Positions 16,892 to 52,263 of a stretch of 64,000 bases of DNA are shown piece after piece. Numbering within the stretch: position 1 is the stretch's first letter; every line of letters starts with the position of its first letter. The stretch is taken from the sequence record MK250028.1. One strand, given 5' to 3'. Under the pieces are notes generated by a model that was not told the DNA's origin, made no database searches, and saw only the letters and a program-made list of their open reading frames with translations. A program made the position numbers and the translations under genes.

Positions 16892-17737
16892 ATGGGTAAG
16901 CAAAAAAGAAGTGAAAATACGTATCAGAAGATTAATACAATCTTTAAGAGAGATGCGAATAATGTAATTATGCCTTATGATGAGTTTGCACTTCCCGAAT
17001 TGGAATGGATGCGAAATTGTAAGTTTGATGCAGAATCTAAAATCGATGGTACTAATACTCGTATTGAGGTAACTCGTGAATTTATTACATCTGATATTGG
17101 TAATAATGAAGGTATTAGATGGAGTGTTGCATATAAGGGTAAAACTGATAATGCACAAATTCCAAAGATGTTGTATACTTATCTTACTACTGTTCTTACA
17201 GAAGATAAAGTTCTTAATTCACTAGGACTTACAAAAGAGATGTATGTCAATGATGAGTTGATGAAAGAAAAAGGGTGGTCTGTATTGAATGAACAGTTTA
17301 ATGTATATGAATTGGATGAAACAAAGATTCCTAAGAGATATACATTGTATGGTGAAGGTTACGGAAATGGAATACAGTCTGGTGGATACTACAGACAAGA
17401 TAATTCTTTTATCGGATTTGATGTAAAAGTTGATGATATGTATCTCCTTCGAGAAAATCGTGATGAGATCTTTAATAAATTAGGTGTTGATATTGTTCCA
17501 TTTGTAGGACAACTTACTATTGACGAAGCAATTGAAATGGTAAAGAAAGGATTTAGATCTAAAATTGCAAAAGATGATCATCTTGAAGAAGGATTGGTTC
17601 TTCGTACACCTATGGGTTTGAAGAATCGTAGAGGTGAAAGAATTATATTTAAAATTAAAACATGTGATTTCCAGAAATATTTTTCAAAGTATGGAACATA
17701 TGATAAGGTAGATCAACCAAAGAATGAAAACTTTTAA
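16892..17737 (+). CDS. RNA ligase (Rnl2-like nucleotidyltransferase)
   Basis: Motif I SKIDGTN, III LYGEGYG, IIIa FIGFDV, IV EEGLVLR, V IIFKIK. No in-frame TAG. Confidence 0.8.
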   Translation: MGKQKRSENTYQKINTIFKRDANNVIMPYDEFALPELEWMRNCKFDAESKIDGTNTRIEVTREFITSDIGNNEGIRWSVAYKGKTDNAQIPKMLYTYLTTVLTEDKVLNSLGLTKEMYVNDELMKEKGWSVLNEQFNVYELDETKIPKRYTLYGEGYGNGIQSGGYYRQDNSFIGFDVKVDDMYLLRENRDEIFNKLGVDIVPFVGQLTIDEAIEMVKKGFRSKIAKDDHLEEGLVLRTPMGLKNRRGERIIFKIKTCDFQKYFSKYGTYDKVDQPKNENF

Positions 17738-42217: not shown

Positions 42218-42624
42218 GGGGATGAATTTGGATTTGCTTATTAATTATGTGGTAATAAATCGTGTAGGAATGTTAATAGCCTTTTGTAGCAATACAAAGA
42301 AACTTAGCAAATAAATTTAAATGACGACGAAATAGAATTTCGTATGGCAGCTTAATCCTGATAGGATTGGTAATATACACCCATTGAAGCATTTGCTCCT
42401 TACACGGTAAGTTTGAGCATTGTCACAGAGTTCGTAAGAGTGATAATCTCTGTTAAATAAAACTCTTACATATACTTATTCATTGTCCAATAAGAGTGAT
42501 TATGACATTAAACTATTTAACTCTAATAACACAGATATAAATGAAAACTAATAAAGACATACGCACGTAGATAGTTTATTATTGACAAGTTAGTAATACG
42601 TGGTTTCGAGTACCACCATCTCCA
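42218..42624 (+). ncRNA. ssrA: tmRNA, tag peptide (A)DDEIEFRMAA
   Basis: 5' GGGGATG pairs with 3' CATCTCC-A, including a G3-U70-type pair. T arm GTGGT-TTCGAGT-ACCAC. Tag ORF 42323-42355 follows ATAAATTTAAAT and ends GCA GCT TAA. Confidence 0.9.
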
Positions 42625-42763
42625 CATTTTTAGATTATATTTCATAATATAGAATTTTTAATTGTTTAATTTTGTAAATGAGTTGTATGTTTAGATAAAC
42701 ATATGACTCATTTTTTTGTATAATAATAAATAAGATAATAAAACTAAATATAAGCATAAATAT

Positions 42764-48757: not shown

Positions 48758-48831
48758 GGTCCGTCTGGTGTAATTGGTAACATGACAGATTGTGGTTCTG
48801 TTGTTCAGGGTTCGAGCCCCTAACGTGACCC
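48758..48831 (+). tRNA. tRNA-His (GUG), imperfect acceptor and T stems
   Basis: Anticodon arm ACAGA-TTGTGGT-TCTGT and T loop TTCGAGC. Confidence 0.75.
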
Positions 48832-49714: not shown

Positions 49715-49792
49715 GCAGTATTGGTGTAGCTGGAGGCGCATTCCTGACTTCCACTCAGGCGGCTTGCGCGAGTTCGATTCTCGCATACTGCT
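49715..49792 (+). tRNA. tRNA-Gly (UCC)
   Basis: GCAGTAT/ATACTGC acceptor with U73, and CCTGA-CTTCCAC-TCAGG. Confidence 0.85.
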
Positions 49793-50001
49793 CATAATAA
49801 GGTAGAGTATCAATGAATGATAGAGAATAAGTTCCTGTCTGAGATCAACCTATCTGTAGTATTTAGATAATTTTATGTATACATAAAATTATAACGAAGT
49901 TTATATTACCTGTAGTCGTAATATTCAAATCGTTCGTTGACATAGTTATTCCGTGATGTAGTAGAGAGTTATAATCAGCATATAACAAACGGAATATTTT
50001 T

Positions 50002-50485: not shown

Positions 50486-50746
50486 ATGAAGAAATTATTT
50501 TCTTTTATATTTTATACAATAATGATTACATCATTATTTGGATGTGCAACAAAACAAGATACAATTAATTATCTTAATAATTATGTACATAAAAATATTT
50601 CTGAAAATTGTATAAACATTTTCAGTAATCAAAGATATAATGAATATATTGATACTGTTACTAATATTAAATATTATGTTTATATAGATTATAATAGTAA
50701 CATCAATATAACAGATAAAAGATTTCCGAGGTATACAGCTCGTTAA
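50486..50746 (+). CDS. Small lipoprotein-like protein
   Basis: MKK, a hydrophobic stretch and lipobox LFGC. Confidence 0.55.
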   Translation: MKKLFSFIFYTIMITSLFGCATKQDTINYLNNYVHKNISENCINIFSNQRYNEYIDTVTNIKYYVYIDYNSNINITDKRFPRYTAR

Positions 50747-51044
50747 AAGAGGTTGACTTGTATATTCTACATTACCTACTGTATAACAATATATGAGTGT
50801 ACATGTGAAAAGATACACCATGTTCTATTAATATAAAAATGTACATATATAGGGTAACAATTATATTAATATCAGATGCATGACATATATGAATATAATA
50901 ACGAATTCGTGAAATGACTATTGTTTTTAGTTGCTTGGAAACGGCGAACTTAGTTTTATCAATAGAGGAAGTATAATATTAAAACAGTTAAATGTAAATC
51001 TTTCTGAGACAATGGGGACAACTTGTAGTAAGAGAGTATTTTTA

Positions 51045-51159
51045 GCTAGTATAGTTTAGTGGCAAAACACCCAAATCCCAGGGATAAGAGATGGTTTGAG
51101 TTGTAGTGTACAATACAATATACAGAAGATTTTGGTGAGTTCGATTCTCACTGCTAGCT
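51045..51159 (+). ncRNA. tRNA-like RNA with a 65-nt insertion replacing the anticodon arm
   Basis: Acceptor GCTAGTA/TGCTAGC-U, D arm GTTT-AGTGGCA-AAAC and T arm GTGAG-TTCGATT-CTCAC. No canonical anticodon arm. Confidence 0.65.
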
Positions 51160-51165
51160 CAATAT

Positions 51166-51293
51166 GAAGTGCGTAGTTTAAATGGTAAAACATCCTTTGA
51201 GTAGGACTCTGACGAGAGATAGATAACAATGTTAGACTCTATTTAATTCCATTGTTTTATTAATGAGTATAGGTTCGAATCCTATGGTACTTC
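51166..51293 (+). ncRNA. tRNA-like RNA with a 76-nt multibranched insertion
   Basis: GAAGTGC/GTACTTC acceptor-like helix, D arm GTTT-AAATGGTA-AAAC and T arm ATAGG-TTCGAAT-CCTAT. Confidence 0.65.
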
Positions 51294-51583
51294 CAAATTT
51301 ATATAGATAAAAAGATTCTGGTGATTAGATAAAACATTATAAGAAAAGAGAAAAAACTTAGGTAACTGCAGATAACTAAGGGTCGTAAGAGTATATGAAG
51401 AAAGATGAACTATGGATACCTCCTTATAATGCGTTTTATCAATAATTAAAGTAGTCTATAATATAAGTTCATTAACGTTATAGAAAAAACGAATATTGAT
51501 AAGTCTACTATGCAGATGGGGCATTGAGAATGCCGTATAGTTCTAAAGCATCGTAAAACAGTTTATTTATATATTTTTAATAT

Positions 51584-51658
51584 GGCTAGATAGCTCAGTT
51601 CGGTTAGAGCGCGTGATTCATATCCACGAGGTCGTGTGTTCGATCCACACTCTTGCTA
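51584..51658 (+). tRNA. tRNA with CAU anticodon (elongator Met or Ile2)
   Basis: GGCTAGA/TCTTGCT acceptor, CGTGA-TTCATAT-CCACG and GTGTG-TTCGATC-CACAC. Lacks initiator hallmarks. Confidence 0.85.
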
Positions 51659-51771
51659 CAGTGTTTTTAGTTGTTTATTAATGATTTGAGATATATCAAT
51701 TTTTGGTATATCTCTTTTTTATTTAGAAAATAATTTGTATCTTTGTATTATTAATTTAAATTTAATAGATT

Positions 51772-52263
51772 ATGAAGAAATATAAAGTATATCAACTTCG
51801 TCGAGAAAATGAAGTTATTATCGATGATAATGAAATATATGATGCAAGAATGAAAGTTATTGCAGAGTATGAAATTAAATCAGATAGAATTGATTTTGAT
51901 ATTATTTCAGAAGATATATGGCATTTATGTAATGTTCATTGTTGGGATAGATCATGGCATGCAGGTGAAGGTGTTCAGAAAGATGATATTATATTAACTC
52001 CTACATCTGACTTTGATGGTTTCTGTAATAGTGATATTGTCGTAGAAACAGAAGATGGACTTTATCTTGCAGAATCATTTGGATTTATGAAAGTAAATTC
52101 GTTAGAAGATGCATCATATAGAATCATTGCGAGATTTCCGTTTATTTCGTGGGATAATATGAGAAATAAGAATGAATATGATAAAGATAAACTATCTGAA
52201 GTAAAACGTAAGATTGATTATGAGAATAAATTGATGTTAGAAGAATATAAAAATAAAAAATAA
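51772..52263 (+). CDS. Hypothetical early protein
   Basis: 163-aa ORF behind the GTATCTTTG box at 51737. Confidence 0.72.
   Translation: MKKYKVYQLRRENEVIIDDNEIYDARMKVIAEYEIKSDRIDFDIISEDIWHLCNVHCWDRSWHAGEGVQKDDIILTPTSDFDGFCNSDIVVETEDGLYLAESFGFMKVNSLEDASYRIIARFPFISWDNMRNKNEYDKDKLSEVKRKIDYENKLMLEEYKNKK

What the first reader, a model, noticed from the sequence alone, without database searches (positions are those of the whole stretch)
51045..51293. Tandem tRNA-like RNAs with multibranched insertions in place of the anticodon arm
Seen: two adjacent elements with good acceptor, D and T arms but 65 and 76 nt between D and T arms (canonical is about 21). The second insertion folds into up to four hairpins (TCCT/AGGA, CTCT-GACG-AGAG, ATAGA..TCTAT, TTAAT/ATTAA). 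The first has a Gly-like acceptor (G1-C72, C2-G71, U73); the second can form a His-like extra G-1:C73 pair. I see no group I core in either. Inference: these may be a new class of tRNA mimics (decoys for anticodon nucleases or synthetases, or aminoacylated scaffolds), or tRNAs with protein-spliced introns that the phage RNA ligase could join.
Basis: partly seen in the sequence, partly recalled or inferred. Interest (0 to 1): 0.65.

Follow-up and report, generated by a model that had tools for sequence, protein, structure and literature searches.

The report
Conserved tRNA-shaped RNAs without anticodon arms
Two neighbouring genes in a Lak megaphage make RNAs with the top half of a tRNA and a conserved folded domain where the anticodon arm should be; one belongs to a family found in many phages, sometimes free-standing and sometimes inserted inside another tRNA's anticodon loop.

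Summary
The window is Prevotella phage Lak-B1-like DNA. Both elements are real: E1 at 51045-51159 and E2 at 51166-51293. The Rfam tRNA model scores them 36.0 and 29.9 bits (cut-off 29), leaving 57 and 69 nt unaligned at the anticodon-arm position. ARAGORN calls neither, even in intron mode.

They are not new sightings. Devoto et al. 2019 list both in a supplementary table as 'Gly CCC' and 'Undet', without analysis.

They are not decaying pseudogenes. Across 8-10 distinct Lak-lineage sequences, 97-100% of proposed pair cells are standard pairs, and compensatory changes occur in acceptor, T and insertion helices.

Neither has a 5-bp/7-nt anticodon arm. E1 has a 3-bp stub with an 8-nt loop, invariant purine-rich linkers and a variable hairpin. 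E2 has an 8-bp acceptor stem (G-1:C73) and three covarying hairpins.

E1 belongs to a phage-restricted family, found in at least 10 non-Lak viral contigs. It is usually free-standing in tRNA arrays. In two contigs it sits inside a tRNA's anticodon loop with its own CCA.

Best reading: these are non-decoding tRNA mimics made by the tRNA-processing machinery. No RNA data were available, so expression, charging and function remain untested.

The parts
51045..51159 (+). E1: 115-nt tRNA-shaped RNA gene and member of the phage-wide E1 family. It comprises the acceptor 5' strand (51045-51051), U8A9, the D arm (51054-51068), A26, the stub, linkers, hairpin, T arm (51135-51151), the acceptor 3' strand (51152-51158) and U73 (51159).
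   Evidence: Rfam tRNA 36.0 bits. Model R2 and alignment A9: 100% of cells paired and 11 of 29 pairs with changes on both sides. Coordinates verified. Listed as 'Gly CCC 26.16' at Lak-B1 423028-423142.
51070..51083 (+). E1 stub hairpin at the anticodon-arm position: CCC/GGG (3 bp) closing the 8-nt loop AAAUCCCA.
   Evidence: It is invariant within Lak. Across the family the outer pair is C-G, A-U or U-A. The loop consensus is RAAUCCNA. The loop C residues vary: CCA in L019, and C>A at 51078 in run X4.
51084..51091 (+). E1 5' linker AUAAGAGA. It is invariant in all Lak lineages; the family consensus is ANAAGA.
51092..51124 (+). E1 variable hairpin. Its length differs between lineages, from about 12 to 33 nt.
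   Evidence: Four pairs show compensatory changes within Lak and four across the family.
51125..51134 (+). E1 3' linker GAAGAUUUUG (family consensus AAGAUNN). Its GAUUU could pair with AAAUC of the stub loop to form a candidate pseudoknot.
   Evidence: 90-95% of cells are paired. The outer pair is G-U, A-U or G-C, with no change on both sides, so this is suggestive only.
51160..51165 (+). 6-nt spacer between E1 and E2.
51166..51293 (+). E2: 128-nt tRNA-shaped RNA gene, found only in Lak lineages so far. The acceptor stem has 8 pairs (51166-51173 with 51286-51293): G-1:C73 is invariant, and the innermost pair is G.G or A-U. The D arm is 51176-51191 and the T arm 51269-51285.
   Evidence: Rfam tRNA 29.9 bits. 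Model R1 and alignment A7: 97.2% of cells paired, 12 of 31 pairs with changes on both sides, 0 of 500 shuffles as high. Listed as 'Undet ??? 20.78' at Lak-B1 423150-423276.
51193..51206 (+). E2 helix 1: UCCU/AGGA with the 6-nt loop UUGAGU, at the anticodon-arm position.
   Evidence: Two pairs are compensatory (UCCU/AGGA, CCCU/AGGG, ACCUU/AAGGU). The loop varies as UUGAGU, UUGAUU, UUGAAU or UUAGAU.
51207..51218 (+). E2 helix 2: CUCU-GACG-AGAG, directly abutting helix 1.
   Evidence: Three of four pairs are compensatory (CUCU/AGAG, UCAC/GUGA, CUG/CAG, UGUG/CACA).
51226..51255 (+). E2 helix 3: ACAAUG/CAUUGU enclosing an 18-nt loop with the conserved motifs UUAG and UUAAU.
Evidence: Two pairs are compensatory and 97.9% of cells are paired.
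51256..51268 (+). E2 3' linker with the conserved motif UAAUGA. Its AUUAA could pair with UUAAU in the helix-3 loop.
   Evidence: 92.5% of cells are paired, with no covariation.
50900..51044 (+). Conserved leader block that abuts E1. It is probably part of the same transcript.
   Evidence: It is conserved in all Lak lineages and is about 88% identical to crAss-like phage cr130_1, where it lies upstream of tRNA-Gln.
51295..51583 (+). Conserved, apparently structured non-coding stretch between E2 and tRNA-Met.
   Evidence: RNAalifold predicts 67 pairs, 16 of them with compensatory changes; conservation is shown.
51584..51659 (+). tRNA-Met(CAT), the last gene of the array.
51688..51724 (+). Intrinsic terminator-like hairpin plus T run that closes the RNA-gene array.
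   Evidence: 12-bp stem followed by TTTTTTATTT.

Best explanation
E1 and E2 are functional, non-decoding, tRNA-derived RNAs.

Each keeps the tRNA 'top half': acceptor stem, D arm with the GG dinucleotide, T arm with a TTCGAWT loop, and a fixed discriminator. The anticodon/variable half is replaced by a family-specific folded domain.
- E1 has a 3-bp stub with the loop RAAUCCNA, two invariant purine-rich linkers (ANAAGA and AAGAU) that may form a pseudoknot with the stub loop, and a variable hairpin.
- E2 has three hairpins and conserved linkers.

They sit in a tRNA array that ends in one terminator. I infer that they are co-transcribed with the tRNAs and cut out by RNase P and the 3'-end machinery. 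I also infer that they receive CCA and persist as stable RNAs of about 115 and 128 nt. Cutting them out would also release the conserved flanking RNAs.

The stub is too short, and its loop the wrong size, to reach the decoding centre. The conserved core, rather than an anticodon, should therefore be the working part. My guess is that it presents a partner-binding surface on a body that tRNA-handling enzymes accept. That would make the RNAs mimics, decoys or acceptors for a tRNA-acting enzyme; E2 carries the histidine-type G-1:C73 and E1 has U73 plus UCC in its loop.

E1 is the free-standing form of a phage-restricted family. In other phages the same element, with its own CCA, sits in the anticodon loop of a tRNA.

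Shown: fold, conservation, family, and the nested versus free-standing arrangements. Inferred: processing and CCA addition. Speculative: charging or decoy function.
For: Identity and prior listing: the window is 100% identical to Lak-B1, and both genes appear in Devoto 2019, Table S2B.

tRNA-likeness: Rfam scores of 36.0 and 29.9 bits.

Selection on structure within Lak:
- E2: 97.2% of cells paired, 12 of 31 pairs compensatory, slid controls 39-52% paired.
- E1: 100% paired, 11 of 29 pairs compensatory.
- The linkers are invariant while the stems turn over.

The E1 family outside Lak:
- A pattern scan of viral contigs plus model R3 gives L332, L382, L386/L389/L169, L383/L385, L384, L387, L381, L388, L237 and L251.
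- On a plain MAFFT alignment, 95.8% of cells are paired and 15 of 29 pairs are compensatory. All 7 acceptor pairs vary, while U73 and the following C are fixed.
- Only 1 hit occurs in one-genome-per-species for 185,579 prokaryote species, on a 3.4-kb MAG contig.

tRNA-gene-like behaviour:
- The elements lie in tRNA arrays in 5 of 6 contigs examined.
- CCA is encoded in L381, L388 and L384. In L381 and L388 the host tRNA also encodes CCA; in Lak, where the tRNA genes checked do not encode CCA, E1 and E2 do not either.

Nested form: in L388 a host tRNA scoring 54.5 bits spans 1040-1207 and encloses the element at 1073-1165. ARAGORN calls introns of 96 and 119 nt. The two host tRNAs differ by compensatory changes in their acceptor and anticodon stems.

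Array terminator at 51688-51714.
Against: - There is no expression evidence. No public RNA run holds the locus, so transcription, ends, CCA addition and stability are all inferred.
- The Lak-only alignments were fitted to my own models, which favours the proposed structure. The family alignment A13 was not fitted.
- Sequences are few (8-13) and related, so the shuffle statistics overstate significance.
- The E1 stub stem and D stem never vary within Lak, and the pseudoknot has no compensatory pair.
- No identity set for any synthetase is fully met.
- No conserved protein neighbour points to a partner.
- E2 has no relatives outside Lak.
Confidence: 0.6

Rival explanations
1. E1 and E2 are precursor tRNAs (Gly-CCC and Gln/His-like). 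Their inserts are introns removed by protein enzymes, and the exons are sealed by the phage Rnl2-type ligase.
For: Lak phages do carry tRNAs with large inserts at position 37/38 (Tyr, Phe, Thr, Gly-TCC). tRNAscan-SE called E1 'Gly CCC'. A PF09414 RNA ligase is encoded at window 16892-17737, and two to three more hits lie elsewhere in Lak-B1.
Against:
- Devoto's Table 1 counts a single tRNA intron in Lak-B1, assigned to tRNA-Tyr, so the eukaryote-mode tRNAscan used there did not resolve E1 or E2.
- By inspection I found no canonical anticodon stem that the insert flanks could rebuild; no excision model was computed.
- The CCCAA/TTGGN candidate stem breaks in Lak-A without compensation.
- The 'anticodon' letters vary: CCC, CCA and CAC.
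- No insert-free allele turned up in 6 lineages, and no joints were seen in 3 DNA runs.
- The insert linkers are the most conserved part of the gene, which is the opposite of what a spacer-like intron would show.
Confidence: 0.08
2. They are dead tRNA genes (pseudogenes) that picked up junk insertions.
For: tRNAscan-SE labelled the Lak-A copy of E2 'Pseudo' and the Lak-B copy 'Undet', with low scores. Other Lak tRNAs are also irregular; for example tRNA-His has a bulged acceptor stem.
Against: Compensatory changes keep every helix intact, including three insertion helices in E2 and the E1 hairpin. The linkers are 100% conserved between lineages whose flanking protein is only 61-87% identical. 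The E1 core is conserved in unrelated phage contigs.
Confidence: 0.03
3. E1 is a selfish, tRNA-shaped insertion element or intron. It spreads among phage tRNA loci and is tolerated because RNase P and 3' processing cut it out. The free-standing Lak copy is an escaped or ancestral copy with no function for the phage.
For: The same family occurs inside the anticodon loop of a tRNA in L381 and L388, with an identical element acceptor stem but different host tRNAs. Family members are scattered over unrelated contigs of 29-180 kb. Devoto et al. report that Lak tRNA inserts are present or absent between close strains.
Against: In Lak the element sits at a fixed locus in every lineage, and its core is invariant while its stems covary. 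That pattern points to selection on the RNA itself. The element encodes no enzyme, and no mobility gene recurs beside it.
Confidence: 0.15
4. The tRNA-like folds serve only as punctuation. They recruit RNase P and RNase Z to cut a long non-coding transcript and free the conserved flanking RNAs (50900-51044 and 51295-51583), in the way mascRNA or mitochondrial tRNA punctuation works.
For: The whole 50720-51660 interval is conserved non-coding sequence ending in one terminator. Both flanking blocks show covarying helices.
Against: Punctuation needs only the acceptor and T arms. It does not explain the invariant linkers, the conserved stub loop, or the same E1 core in phages that lack these flanking blocks.
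Confidence: 0.12

Closest known systems
Lak megaphage 'enigmatic' tRNA introns, including the tRNA-Thr(TGT) insert that 'may encode a tRNA' (Devoto et al. 2019, PMC6784885)
   Same: They come from the same phage group. They are large inserts associated with tRNA genes, and those inserts contain tRNA-like acceptor and T arms. E1 relatives in L381 and L388 lie in an anticodon loop in the same way.
   Different: The published inserts interrupt otherwise canonical tRNAs at position 37/38, begin with a hairpin plus an A-rich linker, and are polymorphic between strains. E1 and E2 are free-standing and fixed, have no exon halves around them, and have different cores. The paper lists them only as 'Gly CCC' and 'Undet/Pseudo'.
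Phage T4 stable RNAs species 1 and 2 (rnaC, rnaD) in the T4 tRNA cluster (recalled from memory, not checked here)
   Same: They are phage-encoded stable RNAs of about 120-140 nt, co-located with tRNA genes and processed with them. They have tRNA-like termini and an unknown function.
   Different: Homology is neither shown nor expected.
Class II tRNAs and allo-tRNAs with long variable arms and 8/4 or 9/3 acceptor/T geometry (Mukai et al. 2017, PMC5389517)
   Same: An extra helix emerges between the anticodon-arm position and the T arm. E2 has a non-standard 8/5 acceptor/T branch.
   Different: Those RNAs keep a 5-bp anticodon stem and a 7-nt loop, and they decode. E1 and E2 have neither, and their added domain is two to four times larger.
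tRNA mimics cut out by RNase P and RNase Z or recognised by tRNA enzymes: the bacterial YrlA tRNA-like domain, the tmRNA tRNA-like domain, plant-virus 3' tRNA-like structures (valine-, histidine- and tyrosine-accepting), and mascRNA
   Same: They use the tRNA top half to engage tRNA enzymes without decoding. Some contain pseudoknots. The TMV-type structure accepts histidine, which parallels the G-1:C73 pair in E2.
   Different: Their topology differs: YrlA closes its acceptor stem with a loop, tmRNA lacks a D stem, and viral tRNA-like structures are the 3' ends of genomes. The Rfam YrlA and tmRNA models do not match E1 or E2.
Non-proteinogenic tRNA-Gly of staphylococci, which donates glycine to cell-wall synthesis (recalled from memory)
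   Same: It is a charged tRNA-type RNA that does not serve the ribosome. E1 has U73 and UCC/CCC in its loop and was typed 'Gly' by tRNAscan-SE.
   Different: Those are canonical cloverleaf tRNAs. Whether E1 is charged at all is untested.

Membership tests
Canonical tRNA (Rfam RF00005) | 7-bp acceptor stem, D arm with GG, and T arm with a TTCRANY-type loop | tested here: met
   Both elements align to model positions 1-71 in these regions, scoring 36.0 and 29.9 bits against a cut-off of 29. The stems covary.
Canonical tRNA (Rfam RF00005) | 5-bp anticodon stem with a 7-nt loop (U33, anticodon, purine 37) | tested here: not met
   The Rfam alignment leaves 57 and 69 nt unaligned at this position. 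The covariation-supported structures give a 3-bp stem with an 8-nt loop (E1) and a 4-bp stem with a 6-nt loop (E2). ARAGORN calls neither.
Intron-containing tRNA (anticodon-loop intron) | Removing one contiguous insert restores a canonical anticodon arm | tested here: not met
   ARAGORN -i (introns of 0-3000 nt) finds nothing at 51045-51293, while it does find the nested cases in L381 and L388. The candidate stem is not compensated in Lak-A. A joined-exon model was deliberately not built.
Intron-containing tRNA (anticodon-loop intron) | Insert-free alleles or spliced RNA exist | tested here: inconclusive
   No insert-free allele was found in 6 Lak lineages, and no joints were seen in 3 DNA runs. 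No RNA data are available.
tRNA-His | Extra G-1 paired with C73 | tested here: met
   In E2 the G(51166):C(51293) pair is invariant in all 8 sequences.
tRNA-His | GUG anticodon in a 7-nt loop | tested here: not met
   The E2 helix-1 loop is UUGAGU, UUGAAU, UUGAUU or UUAGAU.
tRNA-Gly (bacterial identity set, recalled from memory: U73, G1:C72, C2:G71, G3:C70, C35, C36) | U73 together with the first three acceptor pairs | tested here: inconclusive
   U73 is invariant in the family. G1:C72 and C2:G71 occur in Lak-B only, position 3:70 is U:A, and all acceptor pairs vary across the family.
tRNA-Gly (bacterial identity set, recalled from memory: U73, G1:C72, C2:G71, G3:C70, C35, C36) | C35 and C36 in the anticodon | tested here: inconclusive
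   UCC is invariant within the loop RAAUCCNA, but that loop has 8 nt on a 3-bp stem, so the register is undefined.
tRNA-Sec / allo-tRNA | 13-bp (8/5 or 9/4) or 12-bp (8/4 or 9/3) acceptor-T branch, a long variable arm and a canonical anticodon arm | tested here: not met
   E2 has an 8/5 branch but no canonical anticodon arm, and its D stem has 4 bp.
Group I intron or known self-cleaving ribozymes (hammerhead, HDV-like/theta, twister, and others) | Match to a curated covariance model | tested here: not met
   No Rfam family other than tRNA matches 50900-51450 on the + strand at E<=10. The CUGACGAG string in E2 is not conserved in other lineages.
tmRNA / YrlA tRNA-like domains | Match to a curated covariance model | tested here: not met
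   No hit overlaps E1 or E2. The window's tmRNA lies elsewhere, at 42218-42627.
E1 family (defined here) | acc7-UA-GUUU..AAAC-A-NCC-RAAUCCNA-GGN'-ANAAGA-hairpin-AAGAU-T arm-acc-U73-C | tested here: met
   The window's E1 fits every element of this consensus. Model R2 scores it 147 bits. Model R3 recovers the non-Lak members at 94-110 bits.

The most novel reading that the evidence does not exclude
The E1 family may be a previously undescribed class of tRNA-shaped RNA that works in two modes. As an insert in a tRNA anticodon loop, it would be excised as a complete, CCA-ended tRNA-like molecule by RNase P and a 3' endonuclease. That would leave 3'-OH and 5'-phosphate half-tRNAs for a phage Rnl2-type ligase to seal, giving a protein-only tRNA splicing route in bacterial viruses that needs no splicing endonuclease. 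As a free-standing gene (Lak E1, and by analogy E2), the released RNA would itself be the product: a CCA-ended, possibly aminoacylated, non-decoding tRNA mimic whose pseudoknotted core engages a host or phage factor.
Probability: 0.25. Interest if true: 0.85.

Novelty: new variant of a known kind. Interest (0 to 1): 0.64.

Why it matters
Phage tRNA arrays are usually read as codon-usage or anti-defence supplements, and genes that tRNA finders label 'undetermined' or 'pseudo' are ignored. At least some of those calls turn out to be conserved RNAs with their own architecture.

One of them defines a phage-restricted family. It links free-standing tRNA mimics to the puzzling tRNA 'introns' of megaphages.

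This gives a concrete, testable handle on two questions: how phage tRNA inserts are removed without a splicing endonuclease, and what non-decoding tRNA-shaped RNAs do during infection. The possibilities include enzyme decoys, amino-acid carriers and processing signals. In passing it also provides covariance models and a motif for annotating these RNAs in metagenomes.

Tried and rejected
- RNA evidence: the look-up of sequencing runs found no RNA run holding the locus. Read laying on three DNA-contig runs gave only SNPs and small indels, with no joints.
- The window's own assembly is not held. The nearest record, G001, is an 86-kb fragment, so I used GenBank Lak-B1 and Lak-A1 through locus handles instead.
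- My single metagenome scan used too loose a pattern.
- The portal-protein route found only close Lak relatives.
- The leader-block pattern found only Lak and cr130_1.
- BLAST of E1-family members against 50,697 deposited phage genomes found no cultured phage carrying the element.
- E2 relatives were sought with two patterns and with model R1 over 150 loci: nothing convincing turned up. The first of those patterns could not even have matched the Lak-A type, so it says nothing.
- Pfam scans of genes next to E1-family members gave no recurrent neighbour (LytTR, NADAR or nothing). The window's own neighbours are a 163-aa unknown protein and a WYL_2 protein.
- The hammerhead-like string CUGACGAG in E2 is not conserved.
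- RNAfold minimum-free-energy structures of single sequences disagreed with the covariation-supported folds and were dropped.
- Other long tRNA-like genes in Lak (96-101 nt) have normal anticodon arms plus long variable arms, so they are a different class.
- I did not build or search a joined-exon (spliced) sequence for E1, E2 or the nested host tRNAs. The statement that the host loop would read CUUGUAA (Thr) or CUUCUAA (Arg) comes from reading the natural sequence and from ARAGORN's call on it.
Full report
**Source and prior knowledge**

Window 50900-51700 is 100% identical to Prevotella phage Lak-B1 (MK250020, 422883-423683) and 77% identical to Lak-A1, Lak-A2 and Lak-C1. Lak phages read TAG as glutamine and carry about 30 tRNA genes.

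Devoto et al. 2019 (PMC6784885) report 'enigmatic introns' in some Lak tRNAs. Their Supplementary Table S2B already lists both elements. In Lak-B1, 423028-423142 is 'Gly CCC, 26.16' (window 51045-51159) and 423150-423276 is 'Undet ???, 20.78' (window 51167-51293). In Lak-A1 the equivalents are 'Gly CCC 39.69' and 'Pseudo TTG 25.68'.

The part of Table S6 that I read lists introns for Tyr, Phe, Thr and Gly-TCC only. Table 1 credits Lak-B1 with a single tRNA intron, in tRNA-Tyr. So the two genes were seen but not analysed. Crisci et al. 2021 add nothing on them.

**The observation**

ARAGORN finds eight ordinary tRNAs between 48758 and 51659. It finds nothing at 51045-51293, with or without intron search.

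The Rfam tRNA model matches both elements end to end, at 36.0 and 29.9 bits against a gathering score of 29. It skips 57 and 69 nt where the anticodon arm should be. No other family matches at E<=10.

Verified coordinates:
- E1 is 51045-51159, with a 7-bp acceptor stem, U73 and a 66-nt gap between the D and T stems.
- E2 is 51166-51293, with an 8-bp acceptor stem including G-1:C73 and a 77-nt gap.

**Relatives within the Lak group**

I used the 163-aa ORF downstream (51772-52263) to reach more distant syntenic loci. Together with IMG/VR hits, this gave 10 distinct E1 and 8 distinct E2 sequences. The flanking protein in these lineages is 61-87% identical.

The whole interval 50720-51660 is conserved non-coding DNA. 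It ends in a strong terminator-like hairpin after tRNA-Met.

**Structure of E2**

A covariance model built from three B-type sequences was used to align all eight sequences. On that alignment 97.2% of pair cells are standard pairs, and 12 of 31 pairs change on both sides. No shuffle out of 500 reaches this, and slid controls give 39-52% pairing.

Supported helices:
- an 8-bp acceptor stem, whose innermost position is G.G or A-U in different lineages
- a 4-bp D stem
- helix 1 (UCCU/AGGA, 6-nt loop)
- helix 2 (CUCU/AGAG and variants)
- helix 3 (ACAAUG/CAUUGU, 16-18-nt loop)
- a 5-bp T stem

TTAAT/ATTAA pairs in 92.5% of cells but never covaries, and it would be a pseudoknot with helix 3.

**Structure of E1**

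The same procedure was applied to E1. All pair cells are standard pairs, and 11 of 29 pairs are compensatory (acceptor 3, T stem 4, middle hairpin 4).

The D stem and the CCC/GGG stub never vary within Lak. Neither do the linkers AUAAGAGA and GAAGAUUUU.

The middle hairpin ranges from about 12 to 33 nt. The putative anticodon letters do vary: CCC in most, CCA in L019, and CAC in one sequencing run.

**Not intron-bearing tRNAs**

The only candidate anticodon stem in E1, CCCAA/TTGGN, loses two pairs in Lak-A with no compensation. ARAGORN's intron mode is negative.

No lineage or DNA run shows an insert-free allele. The insert linkers are the best-conserved part of each gene.

**E1 is one member of a phage-wide family**

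Scans keyed on the shared D arm returned hundreds of long tRNA-like genes. A motif from the E1 core (AAAACA-NCC-NAATCCNA-GGN-ANAAGA) then found members in contigs of 29-180 kb: L332, L382, L386/L389/L169, L383/L385, L384, L387, L381 and L388. Model R3 added L237 and L251.

On a plain MAFFT alignment of ten members, 95.8% of cells pair and 15 of 29 pairs are compensatory. All seven acceptor pairs vary. The stub's outer pair is C-G, A-U or U-A.

The invariant features are U73 followed by C, the loop RAAUCCNA, and the ANAAGA and AAGAU linkers flanking the hairpin.

Loop RAAUC can pair with GAUUY of the 3' linker. This pairs in 90-95% of cells, and the outer pair is G-U, A-U or G-C. No pair changes on both sides, so the pseudoknot is a hypothesis only.

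The motif occurs once in one-genome-per-species for 185,579 prokaryote species, on a 3.4-kb MAG contig. It occurs in no deposited cultured-phage genome.

**Two arrangements of the family**

In five of six contigs examined, the element lies in a tRNA array. The other RNA genes there include a tmRNA (L388) and a ROOL RNA (L384).

In L381 and L388 the element lies inside a tRNA:
- In L388 the host tRNA scores 54.5 bits over 1040-1207 and encloses the element at 1073-1165.
- ARAGORN reads these hosts as tRNA-Arg(tct) with introns of 119 and 96 nt.
- Shifting the register by one base makes the insert exactly 'element + U73 + CCA', and the host loop then reads CUUGUAA (Thr).
- The two host tRNAs differ by compensatory changes in their acceptor and anticodon stems, so they are under selection.

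CCA is also encoded in the free-standing L384 copy. In L381 and L388 the host tRNA encodes CCA as well. In Lak, where the tRNA genes checked lack an encoded CCA, E1 and E2 lack it too.

**E2 outside Lak**

Pattern and model searches found no E2 homologue outside Lak. E2 shares its D arm with E1, and model R1 scores E1 at 32-36 bits against at most 24 bits for ordinary tRNAs. The two may be old paralogues.

**Interpretation**

Shown:
- Both genes encode RNAs whose fold is under purifying selection.
- Both have a tRNA top half and a non-anticodon lower half.
- E1 is a family member that occurs both free-standing and nested in a tRNA.

Inferred:
- Both are co-transcribed in the array, cut out by RNase P and 3' processing, and receive a CCA end.

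Speculative:
- The conserved core binds a partner.
- E2 (G-1:C73) and E1 (U73 with UCC in the loop) might be charged, or might act as decoys for tRNA-acting enzymes.

Lak-B1 encodes PF09414 RNA-ligase homologues, one of them at window 16892-17737. It has no Rnl1 or RtcB. Ligase-dependent rejoining of nested-host halves is therefore conceivable but untested.

Each E1 and E2 is single-copy in Lak-A1 and Lak-B1.

**Limits**

- There are no RNA data.
- Sequences are few and related.
- The Lak alignments were fitted to my own models.
- The metagenome scan was wasted on too loose a pattern.
- No protein partner is indicated by gene neighbourhood.

Noticed in passing
window 50905-51040: A roughly 135-nt non-coding block directly upstream of E1 is about 88% identical to crAss-like phage cr130_1 (NC_055901, 67503-67628), where it lies about 60 nt upstream of a tRNA-Gln. 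It is conserved in all Lak lineages and has a hairpin with two compensatory pairs. It may be a shared leader, promoter or small RNA exchanged between unrelated Prevotella-type phages.
   Followed up: partly
window 51295-51583: A conserved 290-nt non-coding stretch lies between E2 and tRNA-Met. RNAalifold predicts 67 pairs, 16 of them with compensatory changes, and no Rfam family matches. It is possibly another structured RNA.
   Followed up: partly
window 50720-50830: A further highly conserved non-coding block (…TTTCCGNGGTATACAGC…GGTTGACTTGTATATTCTA…) lies upstream of the leader. It is present in all Lak lineages, and its function is unknown.
   Followed up: no
window 42218-42627: A phage-encoded tmRNA scores right at the Rfam threshold (47.3 bits against a cut-off of 47). 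A tmRNA also sits in the tRNA array next to the E1-like element in L388 (2009-2347, 95 bits).
   Followed up: no
window 48758-48831: The tRNA-His(GTG) gene has an acceptor stem that pairs only if one T on the 3' strand is bulged. Rfam aligns only model positions 8-63 (32.2 bits).
   Followed up: partly
window 16892-17737: A 281-aa ORF carries a PF09414 RNA-ligase (Rnl2-type) domain (57.5 bits). Lak-B1 has two to three further weaker hits, one of them (140030-140551) beside the other tRNA cluster.
   Followed up: partly
L016 2224-2381; L019 2287-2444; L005 8318-8477 (versus window 49715-49793): tRNA-Gly(TCC) carries an insert that makes the gene about 158 nt long in several Lak lineages, but it is insert-free (79 nt) in this window. 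This is the presence/absence polymorphism described by Devoto et al.
   Followed up: no
L160, L161, L164, L167 and more than 60 other viral contigs: An abundant family of 91-93-nt phage tRNAs has a UAU anticodon loop (CUUAUAN), encoded CCA, the same GUUU/AAAC D arm, and a long variable arm whose loop is the conserved CCAGAUUAG. That is unusual for an Ile-type anticodon.
   Followed up: no
L290, L294 and about 18 similar loci on roughly 97-kb contigs: A 124-nt tRNA-like gene family has the same D arm and a roughly 75-nt insert containing CTAG near the anticodon position. These may be insert-bearing suppressor tRNAs of crAss-sized phages. Many other one-off long tRNA-like genes were seen as well (L341, L196, L223, L233, L330, L340).
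   Followed up: no
L384 5626-6308: A ROOL RNA (282 bits) lies in the same RNA-gene island as the E1-like element of that contig.
   Followed up: no
L152 (Lak-B1 201303-201479) and L154 (Lak-A1 215530-215914): Here a tRNA of about 72-74 nt that ends just before the long one sits next to a 96-101-nt tRNA with a normal anticodon arm and a variable arm of about 27 nt. In L152 the Rfam alignment places one inserted base in the anticodon arm of the shorter tRNA.
   Followed up: partly
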